Shown: one piece after another, positions 5,358 through 41,523 of the stretch | How the letters are laid out: every line of letters starts with the position of its first letter | Numbering within the stretch: the first letter of the stretch is position 1 | Virus record (IMG/VR): IMGVR_UViG_3300044640_001495 | Span: 124,001-188,000 of that record | Length of the DNA: 64,000 bases | Strand: one strand, 5' to 3' | Translations under genes and position numbers: made by a program | The notes under the pieces: model-generated | What the model saw: the letters and a program-made list of their open reading frames with translations, nothing else | Told to the model about the DNA's origin: nothing | Databases searched by the model: none

Positions 5358-5850
5358 ACTAGATGCTCATGAGAGCTTGATGCAGGTGAGTGAGCCTTGG
5401 GATTTTACCACCCAAGATTCTAAAATGCATGCCAAGCATTTAGCCGATGCCATGATTGAATTCATGACTGCTCAAAAAGGAATAGGACTAGCTGCCAATC
5501 AAATCGGTATTGCACAACGTGTGTTTACCATGGGCAGTTATAACATCGAAGGATTTCCCATTCCTTTTGCTGTGTTTAATCCCAAGATTATAAGTACAAG
5601 TAACACACAAGAACTTGCAGAAGAAGGATGTTTAAGTTATCCTAATTTATGGTTGAAGGTTACCCGACCTTGCAGTATTGTAGCAGAATATCAAGACAGC
5701 GACAGCAACACGCATACCGTGGAAATGTCTGGACTTATTGCAAGATGCTTTCAACATGAATTAGATCACTTGAACGGTGTATGTTTTGTTGACAAAGTCT
5801 CTCCTATGAGACTACAATTAGCTATGAAGAAACTTAGGAAAAGGAAATAA
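5347..5850 (+). CDS. def: peptide deformylase
   Basis: GIGLAANQIG, EGCLS, QHELDHLNG motifs; ATG 5347 preferred. Confidence 0.96.
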   Translation: MDFKLDAHESLMQVSEPWDFTTQDSKMHAKHLADAMIEFMTAQKGIGLAANQIGIAQRVFTMGSYNIEGFPIPFAVFNPKIISTSNTQELAEEGCLSYPNLWLKVTRPCSIVAEYQDSDSNTHTVEMSGLIARCFQHELDHLNGVCFVDKVSPMRLQLAMKKLRKRK

Positions 5851-8184
5851 ATGATCGAGCCAAGTCAGAACTTACAGCGTATATTCGATAATGCTGTGCA
5901 AGTTGCCAAACAATTGCAACATGAATATATCACCATAGAACATTTAGTCTACAGTATCATATGTGACGAGGAGTCATTTAAGATAGTAGAAAACTATGGC
6001 GCCGATGCTAACTTTATCAAAAGCAATCTAGATCATTATATCAAAAATAATCTCAAAGAAATTGTTGTTGTAGAAACAGAGTATAAGCCCAAAAAGACTA
6101 GTTCAGTTGAACGTGTGTTAAATCGTTGTTTTACCCAAGTATTGTTTAGTGGACGCCAACGCATGGAAGTGGCTGACATCATAATCAGTGTGCTCAGTGA
6201 AAAAAATAGTTTCAGTTTTTACTTCCTGACCAAAGGTGGGTTAACCAAAGACAAATTTGTCAAATACTTTCAAGAAAATATTGTTGTAGAAGAAGAAGAA
6301 CAACCCATGCAGATAGTTAATAATAATCAGGTAGAAAGAATTCTCAATCAATTCTGTACCAATCTCAGTCTACATGCCAAACAACGCAAGATCGATCCTG
6401 TTATTGGTCGAGATGAAGAACTAGAAAAAATACAATTGATACTGGCTCGCCGTAGCAAATCTAATGTGTTAATGGTAGGTGATCCAGGGGTTGGCAAGAC
6501 TGCCATAGCTGAAGGATTGGCTCGCAAGATCTTTGAAAAGAAAGTTCCCAAGTTCATCCAGGATCATCAAGTATACACTCTTGATATCAGTGCGTTACTA
6601 GCTGGATCAAAATATCGTGGGGATTTCGAAGAAAGAATCAAGGCCGTGTTATCTGCACTAGAAAAGAAAGGCAAGATCATTCTTTTTATTGATGAGGCGC
6701 ACATGATGCAGGGTGCTGGTGCTGCTAATCAAAGTTCCAACGACATGGCCAATATGTTGAAACCTATACTTACCAAAGGTGTTCTCAAACTGATAGCATC
6801 AACAACATGGGAAGAATATCGCAAGCACTTTGAAAAAGATCGTGCATTGATGCGCAGATTCCAACGTGTTACAGTTGACGAGCCAAGTCCGGAAATGTCA
6901 GTAAAGATTCTCAAGGGCATTCGCAAATACTATGAGAAACATCACAACGTTAAGATTACAGATGCCGCAGTAGAACAGGCTGTTAAACTTTCTATTAAGT
7001 ATATGGCAGACAAAAAGTTGCCCGACAAGGCCATAGACATCATAGACTGTGCGGCTGCAAGATACAAACTCAAAGATGACGAAACCATGGATGGTGTTGA
7101 ACAACTTGTAGATGTTGAGCAGGTGGTATACGAACTTAGTAAAATGATCAACATGCCTTTAGAAAGTGTGGCACAAAAAGAAAGTAAAAATCTTGCAGAT
7201 CTAGAAGGCGGCATGAAAGCCGCAGTCTATGGACAGGATGGTGCTGTTGATACCCTGTTAGACAAAATATTTGTAGCGCAGGCCGGAATGAAATCACCAA
7301 ACAAACCTATAGGAAGTTTTTTATTCTTGGGACCCACGGGCTGCGGTAAAACAGAAACTGCCAAGCAATTGGCTGATAAGATGTCAATGACATTGGTAAG
7401 ATTTGACATGGGTGAGTATCAAGAAAAACATTCTGTGGCTCGATTGATAGGTGCACCTCCGGGCTATGTAGGCTACGAAGACAATGCCGGACAATTGATT
7501 ACAAAACTACAGGAAACACCCAACTGCATACTGTTATTGGATGAAATTGAAAAAGCTCATCCTGATGTCACAAACATCTTGTTGGCATTCATGGACAATG
7601 GCTTTGTCACAGGATCTAATGGCAAAGTGGCCGATGGCAGAAATTGTATTCTAATTATGACATCAAATCTTGGTGCCAGAGACAACGAAAACAACACTAT
7701 TGGTTTTGGAGAACTAGAAAAAGATGGTGAAGATGACAAAGCAGTGAAAAAATTCTTTGCGCCGGAGTTTCGTAATAGACTAGATGCTGTAATAAAGTTC
7801 TCTAAATTATCTCAGACTGTGGTTATACAGATTGTTAAAAAGTTTGTGGCAGAGCTCAATGATCAGTTAAAAGACAAAAACATTGAGATAGTTTTGAACA
7901 ATGAAGCTGTAAAGTGGCTGGCAGATCAAGGCTTTGATTCTAAAATGGGTGCAAGACCGCTGGCTCGTTTAATCGACAACAAGTTGAAATCGCCGTTGAG
8001 TCGTAAGGTATTATTCGGTGACCTTCAGAACGGTGGTAGGGTAAATGTGCAGTTACAAGATTCAGATTTAGTATTTGAAATTACGGAACTGCCTAAGCCA
8101 CTGTCTAAAGAAGAAAGAAAAGCTCTTAAAAGAACACAGCCAGTGGTAGAGGTCATTAAAGATGTTGAAAAGCAAGACAACTAG
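5851..8184 (+). CDS. clpA: ATP-dependent Clp protease ATP-binding subunit ClpA
   Basis: Two AAA+ domains (GDPGVGKT/FIDEAH; GPTGCGKT/LLDEIEKAH), IGF ClpP-docking loop, no ClpB middle domain. Confidence 0.95.
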   Translation: MIEPSQNLQRIFDNAVQVAKQLQHEYITIEHLVYSIICDEESFKIVENYGADANFIKSNLDHYIKNNLKEIVVVETEYKPKKTSSVERVLNRCFTQVLFSGRQRMEVADIIISVLSEKNSFSFYFLTKGGLTKDKFVKYFQENIVVEEEEQPMQIVNNNQVERILNQFCTNLSLHAKQRKIDPVIGRDEELEKIQLILARRSKSNVLMVGDPGVGKTAIAEGLARKIFEKKVPKFIQDHQVYTLDISALLAGSKYRGDFEERIKAVLSALEKKGKIILFIDEAHMMQGAGAANQSSNDMANMLKPILTKGVLKLIASTTWEEYRKHFEKDRALMRRFQRVTVDEPSPEMSVKILKGIRKYYEKHHNVKITDAAVEQAVKLSIKYMADKKLPDKAIDIIDCAAARYKLKDDETMDGVEQLVDVEQVVYELSKMINMPLESVAQKESKNLADLEGGMKAAVYGQDGAVDTLLDKIFVAQAGMKSPNKPIGSFLFLGPTGCGKTETAKQLADKMSMTLVRFDMGEYQEKHSVARLIGAPPGYVGYEDNAGQLITKLQETPNCILLLDEIEKAHPDVTNILLAFMDNGFVTGSNGKVADGRNCILIMTSNLGARDNENNTIGFGELEKDGEDDKAVKKFFAPEFRNRLDAVIKFSKLSQTVVIQIVKKFVAELNDQLKDKNIEIVLNNEAVKWLADQGFDSKMGARPLARLIDNKLKSPLSRKVLFGDLQNGGRVNVQLQDSDLVFEITELPKPLSKEERKALKRTQPVVEVIKDVEKQDN

Positions 8185-8839
8185 TAGAAAATTCTACGGT
8201 AAATGGTTATACAAGGCATCTATCAATATTCCAGGTGTTGCAATTCTACGTTCAAAATCTTTAGATGATATTATTGATTTTTTGATAAAACCTTTACCCC
8301 AAACTACAAATTATAGGCATAGTCTCAATGTCAAAGCACATACCAATGCTATATATTTGACCAAGTTATGCAAATTTTTAAAACCACTTGAAATTCAACT
8401 ATGGACAAAACGTATCGAAACCAATCAATTGGATTTCTATACCAACGACCAATCGATATACAATGATTTCTGTAAGAAATTTAGTTTGATTCTTACGCAA
8501 AAATTTGAACCTGCAGCTGATGATCTAGAATTACTTAATAATCAATATACAATTATAACTAAAAAATTACCGCACAACAGGTATAGATACAGAGCATTTC
8601 TTAGACCACATAAAATGAAAAGTGATCTAGATGCCAAACAGAAATACATAGAGTGGATCGAGCTGCAAGGTGATAAAGTGCGCCTAAGTAAGAGAGTCAA
8701 AGAGTGGTTTATTAAAACTGATTGGAATTGGGATCGTAGATACCTATTGGTAGAAGACACTCCAACCTTGCTAATGCTGCAAATGCGTAGTGGAGAGGCT
8801 ATAGGCAAGGTATACGAATACGTGGTAGTCGATAAATAA
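8162..8839 (+). CDS. hypothetical protein
   Basis: 225-aa ORF on coding strand. Confidence 0.75.
   Translation: MLKSKTTSRKFYGKWLYKASINIPGVAILRSKSLDDIIDFLIKPLPQTTNYRHSLNVKAHTNAIYLTKLCKFLKPLEIQLWTKRIETNQLDFYTNDQSIYNDFCKKFSLILTQKFEPAADDLELLNNQYTIITKKLPHNRYRYRAFLRPHKMKSDLDAKQKYIEWIELQGDKVRLSKRVKEWFIKTDWNWDRRYLLVEDTPTLLMLQMRSGEAIGKVYEYVVVDK
8831..8838 (+). promoter_or_regulatory. late promoter motif (GATAAATA)
   Basis: ATG 4 nt downstream, no SD. Confidence 0.6.
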
Positions 8840-8842
8840 CTG

Positions 8843-9199
8843 ATGTCCACTGAAAATCAAGTATTATTATCAAATATCACTGCCGAAGCAGCTGATTCTA
8901 CCTATGTGTATGGCTCTAAACAGCCAGGTGCAGGCTATCATAAACGTAGCGATAGCATGCATACAGCCACATATTCAGTGAATTCATTTGTCGGAGCAAT
9001 CAAACTCCAGGCCACATTGGCGTTGTATCCGGCAGATTCTGATTGGTTTGACATAGATGGCACAGATATAGGACTTGGTTCTGATAGTTCTGCATGGACC
9101 ATTACAAATTCTATTAATTTTACCGGGAATTTTGTATGGCTACGTGCTGCATACAATCTACAGAACGGTACTATTATAGAAATCCGATATAATTATTAA
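8843..9199 (+). CDS. hypothetical, beta-rich (possible virion protein)
   Basis: 118-aa ORF behind late motif. Confidence 0.75.
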   Translation: MSTENQVLLSNITAEAADSTYVYGSKQPGAGYHKRSDSMHTATYSVNSFVGAIKLQATLALYPADSDWFDIDGTDIGLGSDSSAWTITNSINFTGNFVWLRAAYNLQNGTIIEIRYNY

Positions 9200-9211
9200 C
9201 TCCTAACATTC

Positions 9212-9219
9212 GATAAATA
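9212..9219 (+). promoter_or_regulatory. late promoter motif (GATAAATA)
   Basis: 15-mer GATAAATATAGTATG identical to 13320-13334. Confidence 0.65.
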
Positions 9220-9246
9220 TAGTATGACCTTACGGAATCATATTAT

Positions 9247-9585
9247 ATGCTATTGAAAGAAATGTTTAGCCCAGTTGGCGCACCTAAAGACGAGCAGCCT
9301 GACATAGATTGGATCGGCGATCTTAAATTCTATATGGACAATAACGATCAAATGCTGAACAAGCATTTCTTCCCTGCGGTTAAACGACATAAAGAACACC
9401 GTGGCAATCCTAACGCATATAAAATTTATATTCGTACACTAGAAGGCTGCTTAGAAAGCTATTGCGAAAAGTACGAAGTTGAAGATCGTGAAGAAAAGTT
9501 CCCTAAAGAAAAACTAGAAGAGTTAGCAAAGCAAATAGCAACTCAACAAGAAAAGTTTATGGAAAAAGGCGACTACGATAAATGA
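9247..9585 (+). CDS. hypothetical protein (possible internal head protein)
   Basis: 112-aa ORF, N-terminus MLLKEMF. Confidence 0.8.
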   Translation: MLLKEMFSPVGAPKDEQPDIDWIGDLKFYMDNNDQMLNKHFFPAVKRHKEHRGNPNAYKIYIRTLEGCLESYCEKYEVEDREEKFPKEKLEELAKQIATQQEKFMEKGDYDK

Positions 9586-10763
9586 AACTCCTAGAACTTT
9601 TTGAACAATCAGGCAAAACTGCTGCTGTTGCATTTGGCAGGATGAACCCTCCTACAATTGGCCATCAGAAGGTGGTTGCTGCTATCTTGAAACAGAAAGC
9701 CGATGCTCATTTTCTATTTGTGTCGCAAACTCACAAACCAACTGGCAAGAACAAAACAAGATATGAAAACCCATTGCCGTTTGATGTTAAACTGGGATTT
9801 ATAGAAAAGGCATTTCCCGATATTGATATTGGTGATACTTCAGTGAGTACTGCTATCGGTCTACTGCAATTTTTAGAAAAACAGGGATTTGACAACGTTA
9901 TCTTTGTAGGCGGTTCGGATCGTGTAGCTAGTTTTACTGAACTGTTTAACAATCAAAACGGTGTTGATTACAATTTAAAATCAATTAAAGTTGTGTCTAG
10001 TGGTGCTAGAGATCCTGATGCTGAAGGTGCTGAAGGTATGAGTGCAAGCAAGATGAGAGCCGCTGCTATTGCCAATGACTTTGAATCATTTAAGACAGGA
10101 TTGCCAGCAGGACTGAGTGGCGATGCTGAAGAAGTGTTTGCTGCGGTTAGACAAGGACTCGAGCCTTGGCTAGAATATGCAGAAAGTTTAGATGAAGTTA
10201 GTTGGCAAGGAATTAAAAAAGGTGCTGCTGCTGCTGGACTTGCTGGGGCAATGGCTTTCGGTGCTTCTGGGGCCAATGCTCGAGTTACTCCTGGCGATGA
10301 TCCCAATATCAATCGATTAACAGGCAAACCAATCGCTACGCAACAGGCAACTGATACCGCACCTGCAAAAGCAGAAGCACCAAAAGGTTTCAGTAAAGAA
10401 TATCTACAGGCTGTAGTAGATGGTAAACATCCGAGACCTATGGTCAGTGTTGAAAAAGCAAAAGAATTATTAAAAAATATGACAGAAAAAGAATCTGTTG
10501 AAATTACAGAACTTGCTGATGACGATGCCTACTACAAATATATTGTAGCAAAAGTAAAAACCTCTAGACCTTTAAGTAATCGAGAAAAAGAGTTTTTAAA
10601 AACCTATACACTACTCAATAAAAAAACCGAGAGTTCAAAGATTCCCTTTGCTGGTGCCAAGGTAGGACATAAGGAAGGTCCTGCAGGTCAATGGCGTAAT
10701 AAAGGCCCTAAGGCAAACAAGCCAGCAAAAGTTGGAGACCTAGTAGGCGGATCGGCATCTTAA
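9582..10763 (+). CDS. cytidyltransferase-like (HIGH-family) nucleotidyltransferase with C-terminal extension
   Basis: FGRMNPPTIGH, VGGSDR, MSASKMR motifs as in T4-like phage cytidyltransferases. Confidence 0.85.
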   Translation: MKLLELFEQSGKTAAVAFGRMNPPTIGHQKVVAAILKQKADAHFLFVSQTHKPTGKNKTRYENPLPFDVKLGFIEKAFPDIDIGDTSVSTAIGLLQFLEKQGFDNVIFVGGSDRVASFTELFNNQNGVDYNLKSIKVVSSGARDPDAEGAEGMSASKMRAAAIANDFESFKTGLPAGLSGDAEEVFAAVRQGLEPWLEYAESLDEVSWQGIKKGAAAAGLAGAMAFGASGANARVTPGDDPNINRLTGKPIATQQATDTAPAKAEAPKGFSKEYLQAVVDGKHPRPMVSVEKAKELLKNMTEKESVEITELADDDAYYKYIVAKVKTSRPLSNREKEFLKTYTLLNKKTESSKIPFAGAKVGHKEGPAGQWRNKGPKANKPAKVGDLVGGSAS

Positions 10764-10781
10764 GGTGTTAAGGAAAATTAA

Positions 10782-11639
10782 ATGAAAGCAAAAGAATTTA
10801 TACCAGCAACTAAGCCTAGAAACTTTGTGGCAAAAAATCAAAAGACCGCAGGTGCTGGCCCACACAAAGATAAGAAACGGGCCGGGGCGCGGGGCGATAT
10901 TAAACATAAGGCTAAACAGTACGAGGAAGGTGTGGCGGAAGGTGACTATCCGGATGGATCATCTGTTAAAACACCAGATTCATCTGAATGGCAACAGCAG
11001 TATCAACAAGCAGTTGACAAAGTGAATAATGCCAAGACTCAACAAGAATACGAAGCCGCAAGTGAAAGAGCTGGCAAGATTAAAGATTTTCTAGCAAGCA
11101 AAGGAATTAAAGTAGGACCAGTATTAGGAAAAGGCATGGCGGAAGGTACGCCTGGTAATGACTTCCGTGTCGGACAACGAGTAATCTATACTACAGGCAG
11201 GGGAGAAAAGTTTCCTTCTATAGTTACTGCTGTTGATTTTGACGAAGACGCTGTTAAAATTAAAAGTGCAAACAACAAACCGTTCCCCAATAGTGGCGGC
11301 GATATTGAAATAGTAGTCGATCCAGGTTGGAAGTTTTTAACTCCGGAACCAGGTGTTGACCCTAATTCTGTTATTGCTGTGTCACCAAGTATGAGAAAAA
11401 CTACAGAACGAGTGCGAGATCCAGAAGATTGGGACGAAGGCAACACCGAACCTCCAAACAACTTCGCTGTATATATTAACGGCAAGAAATGGAAAGTATT
11501 CAAAGGTCGTGGACAGTATGCAGACGACGATCGTGAACAAGCTCACTATGAACAGCTAAAAGGTTGGGCTCGTAAGAAATCAGAAGAGACTGGCAAGAAG
11601 TGGGAGATTTCTATTACAGGCGAAGGTCCAACTGCATAA
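10782..11639 (+). CDS. modular hypothetical protein, probable internal head protein
   Basis: MKAKEFI N-terminus; modules separated by GVAEG/GMAEG. Confidence 0.8.
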   Translation: MKAKEFIPATKPRNFVAKNQKTAGAGPHKDKKRAGARGDIKHKAKQYEEGVAEGDYPDGSSVKTPDSSEWQQQYQQAVDKVNNAKTQQEYEAASERAGKIKDFLASKGIKVGPVLGKGMAEGTPGNDFRVGQRVIYTTGRGEKFPSIVTAVDFDEDAVKIKSANNKPFPNSGGDIEIVVDPGWKFLTPEPGVDPNSVIAVSPSMRKTTERVRDPEDWDEGNTEPPNNFAVYINGKKWKVFKGRGQYADDDREQAHYEQLKGWARKKSEETGKKWEISITGEGPTA

Positions 11640-11860
11640 TGGATGAACTTGCTGACATCAAACGCCTAGCAGGCATTACTGAGTTCAAAGGTTTAAAGCC
11701 TTACGGCGGTAGCAATATCAGTGTTACAGGAATGACCAATCAAGAACTTGAACGCAAGCACGATATTAGACCAGGAACACCAGAATGGTTCCAATTATGG
11801 TTTAGTTTGCCTTACCTAACCGGCGAAAAGAAAATAGGGGATACCAAATGGTTGAGATAA
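11639..11860 (+). CDS. hypothetical protein
   Basis: ATG 11639 overlaps previous stop (TAATG). Confidence 0.75.
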
Positions 11861-12174
11861 CAGAATCAGCAAAATCAAAGATTATGGATTTGCTGCTAGA
11901 AGAAGATAATCCAAAACTGGCATTACGTACCTTTGTACAAGGTGGCGGATGCAGTGGCTTTAGCTATGGCTTTACATTCGATGAAGAAAAGAATGAAGAT
12001 GATTTTGAATTTCCTATCAACGAACAATACAATGTGCTAGTGGATGCAATGAGCATGCAATATCTACAAGGTGCTGTTATTGATTACAAAGAAGAAGTTA
12101 TGGGTAGTCAATTTGTTATTACTAATCCCAATGCACAATCAACTTGTGGTTGTGGATCAAGTTTTTCAGTATGA
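11848..12174 (+). CDS. erpA: A-type Fe-S carrier (HesB/IscA/ErpA family)
   Basis: [32 protein letters not shown]. Confidence 0.93.
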
Positions 12175-12248
12175 ACCCAGATCAATATCCAGTGTATCCA
12201 GAAGATGACGGCCACGATAGATTTCGTAATCCCTATTCACCAGTATGA
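12171..12248 (+). CDS. 25-aa microprotein [25 protein letters not shown]
   Basis: Fills the gap exactly with ATGA overlaps at both ends; not in ORF track. Confidence 0.6.
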
Positions 12249-12583
12249 AAGCCAAAGAATTTATCATTGAAAGAAAAAAATCTAAACGTAGATCAAGAAG
12301 TGCTGCTTGGGGTCCTGATCCCTACGGTGGCTATGGTTATTATGCAGGATATAGCGGAGATTCAAGCGGTGAAGGTGGTGGTGAAGGTGGTGGTGAAAGC
12401 GTAGAACACGAAAACTTTGCTGACGGAAAGCGTCCACAGGACAAAGGCGATAGCAAGCGCCATGGGATAAATACCAAAGCATCAGTAAGTTCGCTTCGTA
12501 AAACTGCTAAACAGGGCGGTCGCAAAGGACAACTTGCACATTGGTTAGCTAATATGAAAGCTGGTAGGGCTAAGAAAAAATGA
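12245..12583 (+). CDS. basic hypothetical protein, probable internal head protein
   Basis: [10 protein letters not shown]-terminus, Gly-rich linker, Lys/Arg-rich C-terminus. Confidence 0.8.
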   Translation: MKAKEFIIERKKSKRRSRSAAWGPDPYGGYGYYAGYSGDSSGEGGGEGGGESVEHENFADGKRPQDKGDSKRHGINTKASVSSLRKTAKQGGRKGQLAHWLANMKAGRAKKK

Positions 12584-13137
12584 AATTATACGAAATTTTA
12601 ACAGAAGGTGTGGCAGGACCAAAAAACTGCTGGCCAGGCCATCGTAAAGTTGGTACACAGCCCGGTACTGGTAAGAACAAAGGCAAACGTGTCAACGACT
12701 GCGAAGAGATTAAAAAAGAAGATGTCGAAGAAGAATTTGACACTATTGAAGAAACAATCAATTACATAGCAGAAGCAAATGGCGTTGATCCTGAAGTTGT
12801 TTGGGAAGACTTAGAAACACTCACAGATGACGAGCTGTATGTATTTGCGTTCACACATGAGCCTGTTAACGAAGATTGGCAAAAGGCCAACAAGCGAGAC
12901 AAGACTGATGGTATGAGCAAGAAGGCTGTTAATGCCTATCGTCGCGAGAATCCAGGTAGCAAACTAAAGACTGCTGTGACTACCAAGCCAAGTAAGTTAA
13001 AGAAAGGTTCTAAAGCCAGTAAACGCAGATCAAGCTATTGCTCACGCAGCCGTGGACAAATGAAAATGCATAGCATTAGCTGTGCTAAAACTCCCGATAA
13101 AGCAATTTGTAAAGCCCGTAGACGCTGGAACTGCTAA
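12580..13137 (+). CDS. modular hypothetical protein, probable internal head protein
   Basis: MKLYEILTE N-terminus; acidic middle, very basic C-terminal module. Confidence 0.8.
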   Translation: MKLYEILTEGVAGPKNCWPGHRKVGTQPGTGKNKGKRVNDCEEIKKEDVEEEFDTIEETINYIAEANGVDPEVVWEDLETLTDDELYVFAFTHEPVNEDWQKANKRDKTDGMSKKAVNAYRRENPGSKLKTAVTTKPSKLKKGSKASKRRSSYCSRSRGQMKMHSISCAKTPDKAICKARRRWNC

Positions 13138-13143
13138 TAAATA
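13136..13143 (+). promoter_or_regulatory. late promoter motif (AATAAATA)
   Basis: ATG 13148 4 nt downstream. Confidence 0.55.
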
Positions 13144-13147
13144 CATT

Positions 13148-13324
13148 ATGAAAATTAAAGAGTTGTTTGAAACAGCATCTAGCATGGGTGCTGGCGATGT
13201 TGCTACATTTATCAAGGGTGGTTCTGGAACAGATGTAGGCACACTCTTTGGGGGTAGTTATCAGCAAAAAACTGTTAAAAAACCCAAGTCTAAGAAGCCT
13301 CGCGAAAGTATATTAAGAAGATAA
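13148..13324 (+). CDS. small hypothetical protein (MKIKELFE...)
   Basis: In-frame ATG within ORF 13082-13324. Confidence 0.7.
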   Translation: MKIKELFETASSMGAGDVATFIKGGSGTDVGTLFGGSYQQKTVKKPKSKKPRESILRR

Positions 13325-13327
13325 ATA
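13320..13327 (+). promoter_or_regulatory. late promoter motif (GATAAATA)
   Basis: ATG 13332 4 nt downstream. Confidence 0.6.
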
Positions 13328-13331
13328 TAGT

Positions 13332-13634
13332 ATGGACTTTAAAAAACACGATCACGAAGCAAGTATGGCAAAAGCAGAGCTAGCTCAAATAGCTAAAAAT
13401 GCCATGGCTGTTTATCGTATGATCAAAGAAGGCGACAATTTAGATGGTTGGATCAGCAGTTATATCTCTGTGGCCAATGATCATTTGAATTCTGTTCATG
13501 AAAAGATGGATTACGAATCTCAAGCACAAGGAGCCGTTAATCAGGGTCCTCGAGAATTTGAAGAAACAGTGCAGTACGAAATTAAAAGCAATCTGTGCGA
13601 GCAGTGGCTAGCGAAAAAATATCAAGGAAGATAA
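13332..13634 (+). CDS. hypothetical protein
   Basis: 100-aa ORF. Confidence 0.8.
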   Translation: MDFKKHDHEASMAKAELAQIAKNAMAVYRMIKEGDNLDGWISSYISVANDHLNSVHEKMDYESQAQGAVNQGPREFEETVQYEIKSNLCEQWLAKKYQGR

Positions 13635-13637
13635 AAA

Positions 13638-14624
13638 ATGGATTTCAAATCATTACTTAACAAATTAGACAGCATGGAAGCTCCTCCACAGACACCGGCT
13701 GCACCAGTTTTAGAAAAAGCTGTTCAACTAAACGAAGATGCACAATTACGTGTTCTAAGTGGACGTTCTACATATGTTGCTGAAGCTAAGAAAAAAGCCG
13801 AAGAAGATGTTAAAGAAGAAAAATCTTCAACTGGTGGCACTATTGATCGTTCTACAAAAGGTGTTACCAAACACAAAGAAAATCCCAATCGTTTCAGTGA
13901 TGAGCCACACACTGAACCAAAGTCAGGGGCCAAATCACAAAGTGCAGCAGACAAAGCAGATGACAAAGCTGCTGACAAAGCTGCCGCTAAAGATTCTAAA
14001 GATTACGAAAAGAAAAATCCAGGCACAGTAACTCGTGTTAAAGATGGCAAGAAAGTAGAAAGCATCGAACCACAATTCAAAAGCAAATTCATGAAGATGG
14101 TGGAAGCAGCTAAAGAACAAAGCGAAGCTGAAAAAGCAGAGGCCAAGAGAAAGAAAGAGCAAGAGAAAGAAGATAAGAAAAAGAAAATAGCCAAGATCAT
14201 GGACGAAGCAATGGATCCGGTTGGCAAGGAAGATGACGACGTCAACAACGATGGTGAGAAAAATAAGACCGATGACTATTTAAAGAATCGTCGTGCCGCA
14301 GTCAGCAAGGCTATTGGCGGCAAGAAAGAAGGCGGCAAGACAGGAATGAGTGCAAAGCAAGAAAAATTCTTTGGAAAAAAGAAGACTGTTAAAGAGTCAA
14401 TTGAAAATATCCTATCATTCAAAGACATGATCAAACTTGTGCAAGAGAGTGGCGGTCAACAACAAATTGATGCAGTTGATCAAGAACTGTTTGCATGGGC
14501 TCAACGTGTTGCAAAACAAAAAATTGGTGAAGGCCTAAAAGCTGATGTGTATGCAGGTATGGTATACGAGCGCATGGGTGGTGTATTTGAAATGTACGAT
14601 GTACTAAGCGAAGACCAAAAGTAA
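13638..14624 (+). CDS. Lys/Glu-rich hypothetical protein (possible internal/core protein)
   Basis: 328 aa, highly charged low-complexity middle. Confidence 0.85.
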   Translation: MDFKSLLNKLDSMEAPPQTPAAPVLEKAVQLNEDAQLRVLSGRSTYVAEAKKKAEEDVKEEKSSTGGTIDRSTKGVTKHKENPNRFSDEPHTEPKSGAKSQSAADKADDKAADKAAAKDSKDYEKKNPGTVTRVKDGKKVESIEPQFKSKFMKMVEAAKEQSEAEKAEAKRKKEQEKEDKKKKIAKIMDEAMDPVGKEDDDVNNDGEKNKTDDYLKNRRAAVSKAIGGKKEGGKTGMSAKQEKFFGKKKTVKESIENILSFKDMIKLVQESGGQQQIDAVDQELFAWAQRVAKQKIGEGLKADVYAGMVYERMGGVFEMYDVLSEDQK

Positions 14625-14641
14625 TTTAACCAATCGCACTC

Positions 14642-14673
14642 AAAAGCCGGCAATTTAGTTGACCGGCTTTTTT
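14642..14673 (+). terminator. intrinsic terminator
   Basis: AAAAGCCGG/CCGGCTTTT stem followed by T6. Confidence 0.85.
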
Positions 14674-14687
14674 GTTGACTATATAAT
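14659..14687 (+). promoter_or_regulatory. sigma70-type promoter
   Basis: TTGACC-N17-TATAAT, then AGGAG SD and ATG 14707. Confidence 0.8.
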
Positions 14688-14706
14688 AGCTATATAGGAG
14701 AAAATT

Positions 14707-14970
14707 ATGTCAACTAGAATGTACGGTCCCGAAGAAAAAGCAAAACTAGAACGTCTTATTAACGAAGGCGGAAATGTACTACGTGAAGTAGAAGATCTTA
14801 AAGAGGGACTTAAAGAAACTGTTAAAGCTGTTGCAGAAGAACTACAGATCAAGCCATCAGTTATTAACAAAGCAATTTCTATTGCACATAAAGACAACTG
14901 GAAAGATCACGAACAAGAATGGAATGACATTGAAATGATTCTTGGTGTCACTAAACGTCTACCAGAATGA
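14707..14970 (+). CDS. T4 DsbA-like dsDNA-binding protein
   Basis: 87 aa helical; AEELQIKPSVINKAISIAHKDN resembles T4 DsbA/GapR-type fold. Confidence 0.6.
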   Translation: MSTRMYGPEEKAKLERLINEGGNVLREVEDLKEGLKETVKAVAEELQIKPSVINKAISIAHKDNWKDHEQEWNDIEMILGVTKRLPE

Positions 14971-15335: not shown

Positions 15336-18005
15336 TTGAGTTACGTAGACGCTTTCTATAATAGAGAGCAGGATATCATCAATGTTGTTGAACGCAATGA
15401 TAAAGGCGAACGACATTACAAAGAATATCCTGCACGACATGTTTTTTATTACCCGGATGCCAAGGGTAAATTTACAAGTATTTTTGGACAGTCATTGTCC
15501 AGAGTAAGTTCCAAAAATGTCAAAGAACATCGCAAAGAACTTGCAATTCATTCAAACAAAAAACTGTTTGAAAGTGATATCAACCCAATCTATCGTTGTC
15601 TAGAAGACAACTATCTTAATCAAGACGCACCAAAATTAAATGTAGCGTTCTTTGACATTGAGGTGGACTTTGATCCAGAACGTGGCTATGCATCACCTGA
15701 AGATGCGTTTATGCCAATCACTGCTATTGCTGTCTACCTACAATGGATGCAGACTATGGTCTGTTTAGCAATTCCCCCTAAGACATTGTCAATGGAAGAA
15801 GCTACTAAACAGGTAGCAGAATTTCCTAACACTATGCTGTTTGACAACGAAGCAGATATGTTAGACACATTCTTAGATCTAATACAAGATGCAGATGTAC
15901 TGAGTGGTTGGAACAGTGAGGGCTTTGATATTCCTTACACAGTTAATCGTGTGACCAAAGTTTTGAGCAAAGAGGACACACGCAGATTCTGCTTGTGGGA
16001 TCAATTCCCCAAGAAACGAGAGTATGAAAAATACGGCAAGGCCGCTGTCACATACGATCTAATTGGCCGTGTACACCTAGACAGTCTTGAACTATATCGC
16101 AAGTACACATACGAAGAACGCCATACCTATCGACTGGATGCTATTGGAGAGATGGAGATCGGTGAAAACAAGACTGTGTACGAAGGCACACTGGATCAAT
16201 TGTACAACAACGATTTCCGTAGATTTATCGAATACAACAGACAAGACTGTATGCTGTTAGAAAAACTAGACAAGAAGCTAAAGTTCTTGGATCTTGCTAA
16301 CACACTGGCACATGAATGTACTGTGCTGTTGCAGACCACAATGGGTGCGGTAGCTGTTACTGAGCAGGCCATTATTAACGAAGCTCACAAGCGTGGAATG
16401 ATTGTTCCTAATAGAATATCTCGTGAAGAAGGCTTTAGTAATCAGGCTGCTGGTGCGTATGTTGCCTATCCTAAGAAAGGTATTCATGAGTGGATCGGTT
16501 CACTAGATATTAACTCGCTGTATCCGTCAGCAATTCGTGCGCTCAACATGGGTCCAGAAACTATTATTGGGCAGTTGCGTCAAGATGGCACCAAGGCATT
16601 CATTGACGGTGAGATTGCCAAAGGCAAAAGTTTTGCATCAGCATGGGAAGGCATCTTTGGTTCATTAGAATATGCAGCCGTACTAGAAAAAAATGTTGGT
16701 CGTGAAATCGTTATTGACTGGGAAGACGGTGGCTCTGATACACTAAGTGCTGCTCAGGCCTATGATCTAATCTTTGAAAGTAATCAGCCGTGGATGGTTA
16801 GTGCCAACGGAACTATTTTCACTTATGAAAAAGAAGGTATTATTCCGGGCTTGCTCAAGCGTTGGTATGCAGAACGTAAAGACATGCAGGCCAAACTCAA
16901 AGACTGCATTGCAGCTGGCAACAAGATTGAAGAAGAATACTGGGACAAGCGTCAGTTGGTCAAGAAGATTAACTTAAACAGTTTGTATGGTGCTATTTTG
17001 AATCCAGGTTGCCGCTTCTTTGATAACCGTATTGGACAAAGTACCACGCTAACAGGTCGTGCCATTGCCAAGCATATGGCTGGCAAAGTCAATGAGATCA
17101 TTACCGGCGAAAACAATCACACAGGTAAAGCAATTATCTATGGTGATACAGACTCTTGTTATTTTTCGGCTTACACCACCCTTAAGAAAGAAATAGATCG
17201 AGGAGCTCTGCCGTGGACAAAAGAAAGTGTTGTTGAACTCTATGACACCATCGGTGAAGAAGTAAACTCAACATTTCCTAAGTTCATGCAGGATGCGTTT
17301 CACTGTCCTAAGACTCGTGGTGAAGTTATTAAAGCTGGTCGTGAAATTGTTGCCAGTCGTGGCTTATTCATTACTAAGAAACGATATGCTGTGCTTTACT
17401 ATGACAAAGAAGGCAAACGTGCAGACGTAGACGGTAAGCCGGGCAAGATCAAGGCCATGGGTTTAGATCTGAAGCGCAGTGATACTCCTGTGATTATCCA
17501 AGACTTCTTAAGTGAAGTCTTGACCAAGGTTTTAAATAACGGCACCAAAGAAGATGTGCTGGAATATATCACTAACTTTCGAACTGAGTTCAAGACTAGA
17601 CCAGGTTGGGAGAAAGGATCACCTAAACGTGCCAACAACATTACAGAGTACGCTGCTAAAGAAAAGAAAGCAGGTAAGACTAACATGCCCGGACACGTTC
17701 GTGCAAGTCTTAACTGGAATACACTAAAACGTATGATGGATGACAAATACTCTGTGGCAATTACCGACGGTGCTAAAGTGATCGTTTGTAAGGTCAAAGA
17801 TAATCCAATGGGGTATACATCAGTAGCCTACCCCGTAGATGAACTTAGACTACCTCAATGGTTTAAGGACTTGCCTTTCAACGATGCTGAAATGGAAAAT
17901 GCAGTTATCGATGAAAAGTTAGAAAACTTGATTGGTGTTTTGGAATGGGACATCAGTTCAACTCGCAGTGATAATACATTCGCAAAATTGTTTGACTTTG
18001 AGTAA
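15336..18005 (+). CDS. family B DNA polymerase (T4 gp43-like)
   Basis: Exo FDIEVD, GWNSEGFDIPY, YNRQD; pol SLDINSLYPS, KINLNSLYG, YGDTDS; TTG start with SD. Confidence 0.97.
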   Translation: MSYVDAFYNREQDIINVVERNDKGERHYKEYPARHVFYYPDAKGKFTSIFGQSLSRVSSKNVKEHRKELAIHSNKKLFESDINPIYRCLEDNYLNQDAPKLNVAFFDIEVDFDPERGYASPEDAFMPITAIAVYLQWMQTMVCLAIPPKTLSMEEATKQVAEFPNTMLFDNEADMLDTFLDLIQDADVLSGWNSEGFDIPYTVNRVTKVLSKEDTRRFCLWDQFPKKREYEKYGKAAVTYDLIGRVHLDSLELYRKYTYEERHTYRLDAIGEMEIGENKTVYEGTLDQLYNNDFRRFIEYNRQDCMLLEKLDKKLKFLDLANTLAHECTVLLQTTMGAVAVTEQAIINEAHKRGMIVPNRISREEGFSNQAAGAYVAYPKKGIHEWIGSLDINSLYPSAIRALNMGPETIIGQLRQDGTKAFIDGEIAKGKSFASAWEGIFGSLEYAAVLEKNVGREIVIDWEDGGSDTLSAAQAYDLIFESNQPWMVSANGTIFTYEKEGIIPGLLKRWYAERKDMQAKLKDCIAAGNKIEEEYWDKRQLVKKINLNSLYGAILNPGCRFFDNRIGQSTTLTGRAIAKHMAGKVNEIITGENNHTGKAIIYGDTDSCYFSAYTTLKKEIDRGALPWTKESVVELYDTIGEEVNSTFPKFMQDAFHCPKTRGEVIKAGREIVASRGLFITKKRYAVLYYDKEGKRADVDGKPGKIKAMGLDLKRSDTPVIIQDFLSEVLTKVLNNGTKEDVLEYITNFRTEFKTRPGWEKGSPKRANNITEYAAKEKKAGKTNMPGHVRASLNWNTLKRMMDDKYSVAITDGAKVIVCKVKDNPMGYTSVAYPVDELRLPQWFKDLPFNDAEMENAVIDEKLENLIGVLEWDISSTRSDNTFAKLFDFE

Positions 18006-33721: not shown

Positions 33722-34362
33722 TGAAATCATTAAAACATGTAGGAAAAATGAAAAAAGCAGGCTCTAAGGTTCTAGTGGCTTTTAGAACATTACCCGGCGA
33801 ATCCAATCAAGCATTAGTTATTCCAGTATCCAGTCTGTCAGACAACTATCATGACGATATCATGAAGTTGGTTGAGACCACCGAAGCACAATCTGCTTTT
33901 GAATTTGGTGAAGTATTATTTACAAGATCATTTTCCGACGGCCGTCCAATGTTACAAGCTCTGAGAGCTGATAACAGAATGGTTAAGGTTCCTACAGACG
34001 ATGTGTTGATGATGCCATCGCCTGGCAGCGAAATTGCTCTGCACCAGCTTAATACACTTATTGCTGAACAAAAAAACTGTGCAGTGGATGACTTATGTAC
34101 ATTTGTTTCCGGTTCTAAGAAAGACACTCCGGAAGTTCAAGAACTTGTAACGGTTAAAGACCTTGCTCCTCCGTCAACACCTGCAGTGGCACCTCTCAAG
34201 GCAGCCGCTAATGAAGTTTTATCTGATAAAGATATTGCTAAAAGTTATCGCAGTCAAGCTGATTCGATGTACAAAGAAGCTGCCCGTCTACGTAAAGAAG
34301 CAGATGACTTAGATCCGCCGGTAAAGAAAGCGGCAAAGGCCAAAGAAGCCGAAAGTGCCTAA
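33718..34362 (+). CDS. hypothetical protein
   Basis: 214-aa coupled ORF. Confidence 0.85.
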   Translation: MMKSLKHVGKMKKAGSKVLVAFRTLPGESNQALVIPVSSLSDNYHDDIMKLVETTEAQSAFEFGEVLFTRSFSDGRPMLQALRADNRMVKVPTDDVLMMPSPGSEIALHQLNTLIAEQKNCAVDDLCTFVSGSKKDTPEVQELVTVKDLAPPSTPAVAPLKAAANEVLSDKDIAKSYRSQADSMYKEAARLRKEADDLDPPVKKAAKAKEAESA

Positions 34363-34663: not shown

Positions 34664-34785
34664 AACGGTTGAAACAAAAAGAATACTTTTTTAGGAATTT
34701 CGAATCACCTAAAAAAATTAATTGATGATATTAGTCTCACTCAATTTACGTGACCAAGTTATAATAAGATGAAAACAATTATCAT

Positions 34786-41506: not shown

Positions 41507-41523
41507 GTATCTAGTATAGATTA

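What the first reader, a model, noticed from the sequence alone, without database searches (positions are those of the whole stretch)
9247..14624. Cluster of proteins with T4 capsid-targeting-like N-termini
Seen N-termini: MLLKEMF (9247), MKLLELFE (9582), MKAKEFI (10782), MKAKEFIIE (12245), MKLYEILTE (12580), MKIKELFE (13148), all near late motifs, many with basic modules. Established: the T4 internal protein CTS is MKTYQEFIAE and is cut after Glu by gp21. Inference: an arsenal of packaged, protease-matured proteins ejected into the host.
Basis: partly seen in the sequence, partly recalled or inferred. Interest (0 to 1): 0.6.

Follow-up and report, generated by a model that had tools for sequence, protein, structure and literature searches.

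The report
Capsid-targeting leaders on phage cargo genes
A freshwater giant T4-type phage carries a shuffled cluster of small, mostly basic genes that each begin with a short T4-like "pack me into the head and cut here" leader. This probably marks them as proteins loaded into the capsid and trimmed by the head protease, and it offers a sequence rule for finding the proteins such phages carry in their heads.

Summary
In the 199-kb genome, 6 of 192 genes match a leader pattern, against 0.04-0.27 expected, and 4 of the 6 lie in window 9582-13324.

The phage comes from lake water and has a PA5oct/RaK2-type head module with a gp21-like prohead protease.

In 41 related viral contigs the leader M-[KR]-x-x-E-Φ-Φ-(x)-E is conserved at the peptide level while the cargo behind it is swapped.

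Cargo modules begin right after a Glu, mostly in [VILM]-x-E. That is the T4 gp21 cleavage motif, and it holds deep inside multi-module proteins too.

The 58-aa gene (13148) continues, after its leader, with a copy of the phage's own capsid-protein cleavage junction.

Independent proteomics support the idea. In cyanophage S-CREM2, 5 of 6 ORFs with the T4-register leader are in the published virion proteome, including all three "unexpected" enzymes. In PA5oct the leaderless nucleotidyltransferase homologue is not in the virion.

Two of the six (9247, 10782) lack the terminal Glu. Only 2 of 6 have their own late-promoter motif.

Packaging and cleavage are likely (about 0.6). Ejection and effector roles are untested. 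I rate this a new variant of a known kind.

The parts
8832..8838 (+). Late-promoter-like motif [AT]TAAATA, 4 nt before the ATG of 8843.
   Evidence: The motif occurs 89 times in the genome, 40 of them within 60 nt upstream of a start.
8843..9199 (+). 118-aa acidic protein at the upstream edge of the cluster. It has no leader.
   Evidence: Its homologue in PA5oct (EST35_0299) is tagged ESI-MS/MS as a structural protein and follows ClpA there, as here.
9213..9219 (+). Late-promoter-like motif, 27 nt before 9247. It is the candidate promoter for the operon 9247-12583.
   Evidence: No convincing sigma-70 promoter or + strand terminator lies inside the cluster.
9247..9585 (+). 112-aa acidic protein (pI 5.3) with the leader variant MLLKEMFSPVGAP. 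It has the core but no terminal Glu.
   Evidence: The family is conserved as MLL[KRN]EM[FW]S[PA]xGA. Distant members start MKLIELFS or MRLFELFG. No Pfam or PHROG hit.
9582..9605 (+). 8-residue leader MKLLELFE of the nucleotidyltransferase. Predicted cleavage is after Glu8 (L-F-E|Q).
   Evidence: Nearly invariant L6, F7 and E8 in 15 homologues. AF2 gives pLDDT below 50 for residues 1-7, and beta-1 starts at residue 13. Distant homologues L101 and L102 lack the leader.
9582..10763 (+). 393-aa protein: leader, then a class-I nucleotidyltransferase domain (aa 13-205, window 9618-10196), then a variable basic C-terminal half.
   Evidence: phrog_3041 and phrog_395 'cytidyltransferase', E 3e-47. The fold resembles PPAT and NaMN adenylyltransferase. 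It is 33% identical to S-CREM2 ORF154, a virion protein.
10782..11639 (+). 285-aa modular protein. Its parts are the leader variant MKAKEFIPAT (no Glu), a basic KPRNFVAKN module (aa 13-48, window 10818-10925), a middle region, and the RVRDPEDW module after Glu209 (window 11409-11636).
   Evidence: phrog_1359. Relatives carry [20 protein letters not shown], with the Glu. The RVRDPEDW module is preceded by Glu in 8 of 8 distinct contexts and is fused directly to a leader in L092.
11639..11860 (+). 73-aa protein ([13 protein letters not shown]...) with no leader. It is a conserved passenger in the cluster.
   Evidence: No family hit.
11848..12174 (+). HesB/IscA-type Fe-S assembly protein. It is acidic and has no leader, so it is not part of the leader class.
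   Evidence: Pfam PF01521, E 2.6e-18. pI 4.1.
12245..12583 (+). 112-aa basic protein (pI 10.1). Its parts are the leader MKAKEFIIE (12245-12271, I-I-E|R), a basic/Gly-rich spacer, and a second predicted cut ..VEHE|NFADGK that releases a 56-aa module of pI 11.5 (12413-12580).
   Evidence: The NFADGK module is preceded by Glu in 17 of 17 distinct contexts, and by the leader alone in L072 and L091.
12580..13137 (+). 185-aa protein. Its parts are the leader MKLYEILTE (12580-12606, L-T-E|G), a Cys-containing GVAGPKNCWPGHRK module (12607-12729), an acidic linker, and C-terminal DUF6321 (12895-13128).
   Evidence: Pfam PF19846. The GVAGPK module is preceded by L-x-E in 8 of 8 contexts. DUF6321 is 75% identical to the C-terminus of S-CREM2 ORF137, and aa 15-50 are 50% identical to ORF160. 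Both are virion proteins.
13137..13143 (+). Late-promoter-like motif, 4 nt before 13148. It is conserved in the relatives of this gene.
   Evidence: In family B, 12 of 14 distinct upstream sequences carry ATAAATA about 5 nt before the ATG.
13148..13324 (+). 58-aa protein (pI 10.2). Its parts are the leader MKIKELFE (13148-13171), a stretch that mimics the capsid protein's post-cleavage N-arm (13172-13213), a Gly-rich part, and the basic tail KKPKSKKPRESILRR.
   Evidence: In an alignment with the genome's own MCP, RKYLAE|SATAGATSAGNVATL pairs with relatives' ELLE|TATAGATSAGNIATV. MCP aa 37-56 is the best non-self hit in the proteome, 70-75% identical over 20 aa, E 7e-4 to 0.02.
13321..13327 (+). 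Late-promoter-like motif, 4 nt before 13332.
13332..13634 (+). 100-aa acidic protein (MDFKKHDHE...), a late-promoter gene without the leader.
13638..14624 (+). 328-aa Lys/Glu-rich protein with a second type of conserved N-terminus, MDFKSLLNKLDSMEAP. That N-terminus is shared with genome gene 194534-195478, next to the T4-register CTS gene.
   Evidence: Weak PHROG hits only.
14707..14970 (+). 87-aa protein flanking the cluster downstream, just before the DNA polymerase gene. It has a weak DsbA-like hit.
   Evidence: It is 45% identical to PA5oct EST35_0310, tagged ESI-MS/MS as a structural protein, in the same position before the DNA polymerase. Pfam PF11126, E 1.4e-4, below the curated cut-off. 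A sigma-70-like promoter lies at 14659-14687.

Best explanation
Window 9247-14624 is a hyperplastic 'internal-protein' locus of a freshwater jumbo T4-superfamily myophage.

Several unrelated genes (9582, 12245, 12580, 13148, and in degenerate form 9247 and 10782) start with a portable 8-9-residue leader, M-[KR]-x-x-E-Φ-Φ-(x)-E. I propose that it works like the T4 capsid-targeting sequence, in these steps:
1. The genes are expressed late, at least from the TAAATA motifs at 9213 and 13137.
2. The amphipathic leader takes the protein into the scaffold core of the assembling prohead.
3. The gp21-like prohead protease then cuts after the Glu of Φ-x-E.
4. The same protease probably also cuts the Φ-x-E sites that separate the small cargo modules, so the multi-module proteins behave as polyproteins.

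The products stay in the DNA-filled head. They would be one PPAT/NaMNAT-fold nucleotidyltransferase and several small, very basic peptides. One of these carries a copy of the capsid protein's N-arm. They would be available to leave with the DNA at infection.

Shown here: the motif and its enrichment, its peptide-level conservation, cargo shuffling, Glu at module boundaries, the presence of protease and scaffold, and the homology and proteomic links to S-CREM2 and PA5oct.

Inferred: targeting, cleavage, residence in the virion, and ejection.
For: 1. Enrichment and clustering of the leader.
2. In 41 related IMG/VR loci, 166 of 1217 + strand ORFs (72 distinct 12-mers) carry it, against 0 of 940 minus-strand ORFs.
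3. Codons vary synonymously (Leu, Arg/Lys, Ala, Ile) and the upstream DNA differs. Selection therefore acts on the peptide, not on the RNA.
4. The position pattern fits a P3-P1 protease site. E5, Φ6, Φ7 and E8/9 are conserved, while positions 4 and 8 vary.
5. The same leader is fused to different cargo in different contigs. Examples are MRATEFIDE|NFADGK, MKLKEIISE|RVRDPEDW and MKITEILTE|GVAGPK.
6. Six of about nine internal shuffling boundaries have Glu as P1, mostly in [VILM]-x-E, in 5-17 distinct contexts each. The T4 gp21 motif is L/I-x-E.
7. The genome encodes portal, a gp21-like protease (phrog_207, E 8e-58), scaffold and a gp23-like MCP. The MCP has KYLAE|SATAG where T4 gp23 has FLTE|AEIGG. 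The scaffold starts MLDFVKQLFE.
8. T4 gp22 starts MLKEQLIAE and T4 gp21 starts MNEPQLLIE, the same 9-residue register. In T4 the patterns hit ipII, ipIII, gp21 and gp22 among 6 hits.
9. The family-B protein copies the MCP cleavage junction. S-CREM2 virion protein ORF160 does the same with its own MCP (75% over 24 aa, E 5e-8).
10. In the S-CREM2 virion proteome (PMC10665884), ORF6 SAM hydrolase, ORF13, ORF14 kinase, ORF136 and ORF154 nucleotidyltransferase all carry M[KQ]x[FL]xxF[LF]xE. These are 5 of the 6 such ORFs in the genome, hypergeometric P = 0.003.
11. PA5oct nucleotidyltransferase EST35_0307 has no leader and no ESI-MS/MS tag. Its flanking genes have the tag, and so do the homologues of 8843 and 14707.
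12. The genome's T4-register gene (MKTFKEYLAE) has a PA5oct homologue that is a virion protein by MS.
13. The leader lies outside the folded nucleotidyltransferase domain.
Against: - There is no direct data for this phage: no virion proteome, no N-terminal mapping, no expression timing.
- The locus lies between a chaperone block and the DNA polymerase gene. Four of the six genes lack their own late motif.
- The leaders are 1-2 residues shorter than the experimentally defined IPIII CTS. K or L stands at position 4, where T4 needs Tyr4 for targeting.
- 9247 and 10782 lack the Glu.
- T4 gp61.1 (MKTFKEFIKE) has the motif but is not known to be packaged.
- S-CREM2 ORF175 has the motif and was not detected.
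- The S-CREM2 authors themselves caution that abundant enzymes may co-purify with virions.
- About three of nine shuffling boundaries do not have Glu at P1.
- The Glu could simply be the first residue of each module.
- The similarity to the capsid-protein junction is short and low in complexity.
Confidence: 0.6

Rival explanations
1. The proteins are packaged and cut as proposed, but they are structural or charge-neutralising head contents, not effectors. This would resemble T4 internal peptides or capsid-wall-anchored DNA binders. Nothing they do matters in the next host.
For: - Most of the cargo is small, very basic and without enzyme folds.
- Family B carries a capsid N-arm mimic plus a basic tail, which suits an anchor on the inner capsid wall.
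- T4 core proteins gp22, gp67 and gp68 are also cut into small peptides.
Against: - One cargo is an enzyme, the nucleotidyltransferase.
- The S-CREM2 leader set includes a SAM hydrolase and a kinase, which make sense only in a host cell.
- The locus is hyperplastic, as expected for arms-race genes.
Confidence: 0.25
2. The leader is a conserved N-terminal tag for something other than the capsid. One candidate is recognition by the phage's own DnaJ/ClpA-type chaperone block just upstream (window 4500-8184). Another is a different Glu-specific processing step. On this reading the proteins are non-virion early or middle proteins.
For: - The cluster directly follows DnaJ, peptide deformylase and a ClpA-like ATPase.
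- Four genes have no late motif of their own.
- T4 gp61.1 shows that such an N-terminus can sit in a replication region.
Against: - The DnaJ-ClpA block is followed by MS-verified virion proteins in PA5oct as well.
- The leader matches known prohead-core N-termini and the gp21 motif.
- The S-CREM2 leader set is found in virions.
- Family B copies the capsid-protein junction.
Confidence: 0.08
3. The shared N-terminus is a nucleotide-level feature. It could be a translation-initiation or repressor site, or a recombination cassette boundary that drives module shuffling. It would have no role as a peptide.
For: - The first codons are A/T-rich (ATG AAA ...), and GAA and TTT dominate.
- T4-type phages do shuffle genes at conserved short sequences (PeSLs, PMC4122927, listed).
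Against: - Synonymous variation is plentiful at the Leu, Arg/Lys, Ala and Ile codons, and the upstream sequences are unrelated.
- Conservative amino-acid swaps keep the physicochemical pattern (K/R, I/V, F/L).
- The Glu rule also holds at internal junctions far from any start codon.
Confidence: 0.05
4. The similarity is chance or N-terminal compositional bias, since MK... starts are common.
For: K is the third commonest second residue (29 of 192).
Against: - No column shuffle out of 2000 reaches the observed 6.
- The leader is conserved across 41 loci down to 37% protein identity.
Confidence: 0.01

Closest known systems
T4 internal proteins IPI/IPII/IPIII with their capsid-targeting sequence (CTS), and the variable IP loci of T-even phages.
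   Same: - A short N-terminal propeptide on otherwise unrelated, mostly basic small proteins.
- It ends in L/I-x-E for the gp21 protease.
- The genes are clustered and variable between relatives.
- The phage has gp21-, gp22- and gp23-type head genes.
- One gene outside the window (MKTFKEYLAE) matches the T4 CTS at 6 of 10 identical and 3 conservative positions.
   Different: - The leaders in the window are 8-9 residues, the register of the T4 gp22 N-terminus, not the 10-residue IPIII CTS.
- There is no sequence homology of the cargo to the IPs.
- The cargo is built from shuffled mini-modules separated by further Φ-x-E sites, like a polyprotein.
- One cargo mimics the capsid-protein N-arm.
- The phage is a freshwater jumbo phage of the PA5oct/RaK2 head lineage.
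T4 prohead core proteins gp22, gp21, gp67 and gp68.
   Same: The N-termini MLKEQLIAE (gp22) and MNEPQLLIE (gp21) fit the window's 9-residue pattern. These proteins are cut at several L/I-x-E sites into small peptides.
   Different: The window genes are not homologues of these proteins and lie far from the head module. They carry enzyme and basic cargo rather than scaffold coiled coils.
Virion-associated 'regulatory' proteins of T4-like cyanophages: S-CREM2 SAM hydrolase, APH-like kinase and cytidylyltransferase (PMC10665884).
   Same: - The nucleotidyltransferase is homologous, and the DUF6321 and CWPGxxK modules are shared.
- They carry an N-terminal M-K-x-F-x-x-F-L-x-E leader and upstream late promoters.
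- The proteins were found in CsCl-purified virions.
   Different: - S-CREM2 uses the 10-residue T4 register, identical in its last five residues to the T4 gp23 cleavage site SFLTE|A.
- The paper does not mention a targeting sequence and leaves open how the enzymes get into the virion.
- Neither my two full-text queries for 'capsid targeting' nor term look-ups in two cyanophage genomics papers linked the CTS to cyanophage proteins.
Inner-body and ejection proteins of phiKZ-like jumbo phages (phiKZ, 201phi2-1, SPN3US).
   Same: Many head-internal proteins are cut after Glu by a gp21-related prohead protease. Their propeptides carry several redundant sites.
   Different: The motif there is S/A-x-E. 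It is a different phage lineage, and no short portable N-terminal leader of this kind has been described.
T4 Alt ADP-ribosyltransferase.
   Same: It is an enzyme packaged in the head, trimmed by gp21 and injected with the DNA. It is a precedent for a packaged nucleotidyltransferase.
   Different: The fold and chemistry are unrelated. Alt is cut at both ends.

Membership tests
T4-type CTS-bearing internal head proteins | An extreme N-terminal propeptide of about 10-19 residues that resembles the CTS: M-K, hydrophobic residues at the targeting positions, an amphipathic character. | tested here: met
   9582, 12245, 12580 and 13148 carry M-K-x-x-E-Φ-Φ-(x)-E. The register is 1-2 residues shorter than IPIII and equals that of T4 gp22. 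9247 and 10782 have only the core.
T4-type CTS-bearing internal head proteins | The propeptide ends in the prohead-protease site L/I-x-E. | tested here: met
   L-F-E (9582, 13148), I-I-E (12245) and L-T-E (12580). Not met for 9247 (..MFSPVG) and 10782 (..FIPATK).
T4-type CTS-bearing internal head proteins | The phage encodes a gp21-type prohead protease and a scaffold core. | tested here: met
   phrog_207 head maturation protease, E 7.7e-58, 33% identical to T4 gp21. A scaffold-like 365-aa protein is 42% identical to its PA5oct counterpart. The MCP is gp23-like.
T4-type CTS-bearing internal head proteins | Late expression together with the head genes. | tested here: inconclusive
   TAAATA motifs lie before 8843, 9247, 13148 and 13332 but not before 9582, 10782, 12245 or 12580. 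Lake metatranscriptome contigs cover parts of the locus but cannot give timing or starts.
T4-type CTS-bearing internal head proteins | Physical presence in purified virions. | not testable with these tools
   The evidence is only indirect. Homologues or shared modules are in the S-CREM2 virion proteome (ORF154, 137, 160). The flanking genes' homologues are in the PA5oct virion, and the leaderless PA5oct nucleotidyltransferase is absent.
T4-type CTS-bearing internal head proteins | Cleavage after Glu demonstrated, and the leader sufficient to package a foreign protein. | not testable with these tools
   This needs N-terminal MS and fusion experiments.
T4-type CTS-bearing internal head proteins | Ejection into the host with the DNA. 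| not testable with these tools
   No data.
Class-I nucleotidyltransferase (PPAT/NMNAT/cytidylyltransferase superfamily), for gene 9582 only | A Rossmann-like fold with the N-terminal (H/T)xGH motif after beta-1. | tested here: met
   GRMNPPTIGH at aa 19-28 is invariant across 15 homologues. The AF2 model (pLDDT 85.5) matches PPAT and NaMNAT structures at Foldseek E 1e-6, TM 0.55-0.72. Pfam PF01467 scores 19.3 bits, below the 21-bit cut-off. The substrate is unknown.

The most novel reading that the evidence does not exclude
Aquatic T4-superfamily phages (cyanophages, pelagiphage-like phages and this freshwater jumbo lineage) share a simple protein grammar. It has three parts: a portable N-terminal capsid-targeting leader, cargo modules delimited by Φ-x-E prohead-protease sites, and sometimes a copy of the phage's own capsid-protein N-arm as a second anchor or substrate mimic.

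On this reading the grammar explains how 'unexpected' enzymes such as SAM hydrolase, kinase and nucleotidyltransferase get into virions. It would also let the packaged, and perhaps injected, proteome be read from sequence alone, giving a way to mine first-minute counter-defence proteins from metagenomes.
Probability: 0.35. Interest if true: 0.8.

Novelty: new variant of a known kind. Interest (0 to 1): 0.66.

Why it matters
Capsid-packaged proteins are the first phage proteins to reach a host cell. In T4 they include anti-restriction and host-takeover factors.

Outside the T-even phages and phiKZ-like phages there is no rule for recognising such proteins. Cyanophage proteomics papers report enzymes in virions without explaining how they get there.

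If the leader-plus-Φ-x-E grammar holds, three things follow:
- It explains those reports.
- It predicts the cargo of uncultured jumbo phages from sequence alone.
- It gives a short tag that might be used to load foreign proteins into non-coli phage heads.

The idea is directly testable, either by re-searching existing virion MS data for peptides that start after the Glu or by a protease-peptide assay.

Tried and rejected
- **Paralogy.** All-against-all blastp of the cluster proteins found no similarity beyond the 7-9-residue leader. The cluster is not a paralogous gene family.
- **RNA-level motif.** Rejected on codon variation.
- **tRNAs.** None in the window.
- **Sigma-70 promoters and terminators.** Nothing above the shuffle expectation inside the cluster.
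- **Strict T4-register pattern.** In HTVC008M it finds nothing. Its nucleotidyltransferase starts MKTLKELLRKK, without Glu. In PA5oct only one weak hit appears (EST35_0271, not MS-detected), so the rule is not universal.
- **Family searches of the cargo.** Pfam, PHROG and NCBIfam scans left 9247, 12245, 13148, 13332 and 13638 without a function. A PDB sequence search of the nucleotidyltransferase found nothing; only the fold search did.
- **Automated listing of homology boundaries.** The first version was far too noisy. A stricter version gave a usable but small set.
- **Reads.** Read laying gave only Logan contigs of relatives in RNA libraries, with no transcript ends or timing. The stretch laid was 5,901 letters.
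- **Large protein searches.** These were not used, because the viral-contig scan gave enough relatives.
- **Habitat.** I first assumed a marine origin from the cyanophage and pelagiphage hits. The runs say lake water.

Full report
**What the window is**

The window is bases 48450-112449 of a single 199,328-bp contig with 40.6% GC.
- Its DNA polymerase (window 15336-18005) is about 50% identical to those of the jumbo phages Phosso and Atu_ph07, and about 43% identical to the RaK2/121Q group.
- Its major capsid protein (genome 145472-146647) is 66-70% identical to those of Phosso, a Vibrio jumbo phage and PA5oct.
- The head module reads portal, small core protein, two further proteins, gp21-like prohead protease (phrog_207, E 8e-58), a 365-aa scaffold-like protein, and a gp23-like capsid protein.
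- A viral contig of 353,123 bp encodes an identical nucleotidyltransferase. The 199-kb contig is therefore probably part of a jumbo genome.
- Public runs that hold the locus at 97-99% of sampled words are lake-water metagenomes. The phage is from fresh water, not the sea.

**Checking the observation**

All six N-termini are real first-ATG starts on the + strand.

I called 192 genes on the contig with a simple codon-usage model.
- The pattern MK.{2,3}E[FLIMYV][FLIMV].?E stands at six N-termini. Expected is 0.044 from its internal frequency.
- When the position-specific composition of N-termini is kept, the expectation is 0.07-0.27, and no column shuffle out of 2000 reaches six.
- Four of the six lie within 3.7 kb of the window (9582, 12245, 12580, 13148).
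- The two others are outside the window. One is genome 134412 (MKISELLVE). The other is genome 193972, which begins MKTFKEYLAE.
- That last N-terminus is a near copy of the T4 IPII/IPIII leader MKTYQEFIAE, which I verified to be encoded twice in T4. Its PA5oct homologue is a virion protein by mass spectrometry.

The genes at 9247 and 10782 share only the core M-x-x-K-E-Φ-Φ and have no Glu at position 8-10.

The proteins are not paralogues of one another. The motif-bearing ones are basic (pI 8.8-10.2), while their motif-less neighbours are acidic.

The late-promoter claim is only partly right.
- [AT]TAAATA occurs 89 times in the genome, fewer than composition predicts. Forty of these lie within 60 nt upstream of a start, many only 4-7 nt before the ATG.
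- In the locus the motif precedes 8843, 9247, 13148 and 13332.
- The tightly packed genes 9582-12583 have none of their own. No convincing sigma-70 promoter or terminator lies inside the locus.

**The leader is a portable peptide module**

A scan of IMG/VR with the nucleotidyltransferase returned 41 syntenic loci, from 100% down to 37% identity.
- In them, 166 of 1217 + strand ORFs (72 distinct 12-mers) start with M[KRL]..[EQ]ΦΦ. None of 940 minus-strand ORFs does.
- Five sub-families correspond to the window's genes.
- Positions E5, Φ6, Φ7 and the Glu at 8 or 9 are conserved. Positions 4 and 8 vary freely. This is the pattern expected for P5-P1 of a site whose P2 is free.
- Codons for Leu, Arg/Lys, Ala and Ile vary synonymously, and the upstream DNA differs between copies. 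Selection therefore acts on the peptide.
- The cargo behind the leader changes from contig to contig. The same leader is found directly on the NFADGK module, on the RVRDPEDW module, on the KPRNFVAK module, or on long multi-module proteins.
- In the AlphaFold model of the nucleotidyltransferase domain (pLDDT 85.5), residues 1-7 are unstructured and beta-1 starts at residue 13. Distant homologues simply lack the leader.

**Glu at the module boundaries**

The cargo modules NFADGK.. (17 distinct upstream contexts), RVRDPEDW.. (8), GVAGPK.. (8) and [ST]ATAGATSAG.. (8) are always preceded by Glu. This holds whether the module follows the leader directly or lies hundreds of residues inside a protein. 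The upstream tripeptide is mostly [VILM]-x-E.

Two more modules, AKYQGREV and ASLGNVL, behave the same way.

A stricter unsupervised listing of boundaries with at least four unrelated upstream contexts recovers three of these. It also shows about three boundaries without Glu at P1. The rule therefore holds for roughly six of nine modules, against a Glu background I estimate at roughly 9% (not computed).

T4 gp21 cuts after L/I-x-E (PMC9026906).

In window coordinates this predicts cuts after the following residues:
- residue 8 of 9582
- residues 9 and 56 of 12245
- residue 9 of 12580
- residue 8 of 13148
- residue 209 of 10782

**Links to the head proteins**

The T4 gp23 propeptide ends GSFLTE|AEIGG. 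This phage's capsid protein has RKYLAE|SATAGATSAGNVATL at the homologous place. The same YLAE ends the T4-register leader MKTFKEYLAE.

The scaffold-like protein starts MLDFVKQLFE. T4 gp22 starts MLKEQLIAE and T4 gp21 starts MNEPQLLIE. These have the same 9-residue register as the window's leaders. In T4 my patterns hit only six ORFs, four of which are ipII, ipIII, gp21 and gp22.

The 58-aa family (window 13148) is the most telling case.
- In relatives it reads MKIRELLE|TATAGATSAGNIATV.... That is a copy of the capsid-protein junction and N-arm.
- The capsid protein is the best non-self hit in the whole proteome, at 70-75% identity over 20 residues, E 7e-4 to 0.02.
- The same trick appears independently in cyanophage S-CREM2. 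Virion protein ORF160 copies 24 residues of its own capsid N-arm (75% identity, E 5e-8 in a six-frame search of that genome).

**Independent proteomic evidence**

S-CREM2 has a published virion proteome of 52 of 221 ORFs (PMC10665884).
- I scanned every start codon of its genome for M[KQRN]x[FYLIW]xx[FYLIMW][FLIMV]xE. This finds six annotated ORFs.
- Five are in the virion: SAM hydrolase (MKDFDSFLEE), ORF13 (MKDLHSFLTE), APH-like kinase (MKRFDAFLTE), ORF136 (MQTFSMFFSE) and cytidylyltransferase (MKNFSSFLTE). The hypergeometric P is 0.003.
- These include all three 'regulatory' enzymes whose presence the authors could not explain.
- The window's nucleotidyltransferase is their ORF154 homologue. 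The two cargo modules of 12580 recur in virion proteins ORF137 and ORF160.

PA5oct gives the converse case.
- Its nucleotidyltransferase homologue starts MSILTSIL, has no leader and carries no ESI-MS/MS tag.
- The genes around it do carry the tag. So do the homologues of the window's flanking genes 8843 and 14707, in the same order: DnaJ-ClpA-virion protein ... virion protein-DNA polymerase.
- The position of the locus beside replication genes therefore does not argue against virion proteins.

**What the cargo is**

Gene 9582 encodes a class-I nucleotidyltransferase.
- It carries the GRMNPPTIGH motif.
- Its fold matches phosphopantetheine and NaMN adenylyltransferases at Foldseek E 1e-6.
- Its substrate is unknown.

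The rest are small modules without known function: a phrog_1359-type basic module, DUF6321, a Cys-containing CWPGHRK module, the very basic NFADGK module, and the RVRDPEDW module.

The HesB/IscA gene (11848) and the 73-aa gene (11639) have no leader. They are passengers in the locus.

**Verdict**

Its interpretation is the best-supported one.
- I put about 0.6 on packaging plus protease maturation for at least 9582, 12245, 12580 and 13148.
- I put less on 9247 and 10782, and about 0.35 on ejected effectors.

The known kind is the T4 CTS/internal-protein system. The new elements are these:
- the shorter gp22-type register
- the polyprotein-like module grammar
- the capsid N-arm mimicry
- the extension to a freshwater jumbo lineage and to cyanophage virion enzymes

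Neither my two full-text queries for 'capsid targeting' with cyanophage terms nor term look-ups in two cyanophage genomics papers linked the CTS to cyanophage proteins.

Weak points are the lack of any direct data for this phage, the post-hoc patterns, the short low-complexity similarities, and the exceptions (T4 gp61.1, S-CREM2 ORF175, modules without Glu).

Noticed in passing
window 4500-8184: A chaperone block: DnaJ (4500-5357), peptide deformylase (5347-5850) and a ClpA/ClpB-like double AAA+ ATPase (5851-8184). It is syntenic with DnaJ-ClpA in PA5oct, which also encodes a ClpP tagged ESI-MS/MS.
   Followed up: partly
genome 193972-195478 (L002:13972-15478), outside the window: A 186-aa gene starts MKTFKEYLAE, close to the T4 CTS, with ATAAATA 5 nt upstream. 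Its PA5oct homologue is a virion protein. The next gene (314 aa, acidic, Pro/Met-rich) shares the N-terminus M[DN]F[KN]xL[LM]xK[LM]..[ML][ED]AP with window gene 13638.
   Followed up: partly
genome 132938-135320 (L001:938-3320), outside the window: Two genes just upstream of the head region start MRVSNIIFE (490 aa) and MKISELLVE (302 aa, pI 10.2). A late motif precedes the first. Neither has a family hit.
   Followed up: partly
T4 NC_000866 18966-19130: T4 gp61.1 (54 aa, hypothetical, next to the primase gene) starts MKTFKEFIKE, a CTS-like N-terminus. As far as I know it has not been reported as packaged.
   Followed up: no
Synechococcus phage S-RIM8 KX349285 93806-94132: A 108-aa ORF starts MKSYNEFISE, 7 of 10 identical to the T4 CTS. 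It is a candidate IP-like protein in a cyanophage.
   Followed up: no
Synechococcus phage S-CREM2 OR473000 128342-129235 and 7704-10313: Virion protein ORF160 copies 24 residues of its own capsid N-arm. The Cas9-like virion nuclease ORF12 has an internal ..RFASFMAE|A stretch at residues 18-25 that looks like a displaced leader or cleavage site.
   Followed up: partly
whole genome; e.g. window 8832, 13137, 13321: The late motif [AT]TAAATA often lies only 4-7 nt before the ATG, with no room for a Shine-Dalgarno sequence. This suggests leaderless or near-leaderless late mRNAs.
   Followed up: no
genome 26794-27478, and window 11848-12174: The phage seems to encode an IscU/NifU-like protein and two IscA/HesB-like proteins. 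Only the window copy was checked against Pfam. The others are judged from their N-termini alone.
   Followed up: no
window about 34000-47000: A low-GC island (0.32-0.36, against about 0.40 elsewhere) holds a run of 400-444-aa ORFs at 34786-39849, two of which share an N-terminal ..(I/D)(V/F)PWIHL.. motif, and a strand switch at about 41.5 kb.
   Followed up: no
window 56246-64000 (minus strand), continuing beyond the window: A giant ORF of 4576 aa in the full contig, followed by several 584-690-aa ORFs with similar MAY.. N-termini. These are presumably fibre or structural genes.
   Followed up: no
window 8800-14700: Contigs from four lake or freshwater metatranscriptome libraries, mostly 90-95% identical and so from relatives, lie on 8800-10200, 11200-12150 and 13330-14700. 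DNA carry-over cannot be excluded, and no transcript ends can be read from contigs.
   Followed up: partly
L064 (IMGVR_UViG_3300044640_001495): A 353,123-bp viral contig encodes an identical nucleotidyltransferase. The 199-kb contig is probably an incomplete jumbo-phage genome.
   Followed up: no
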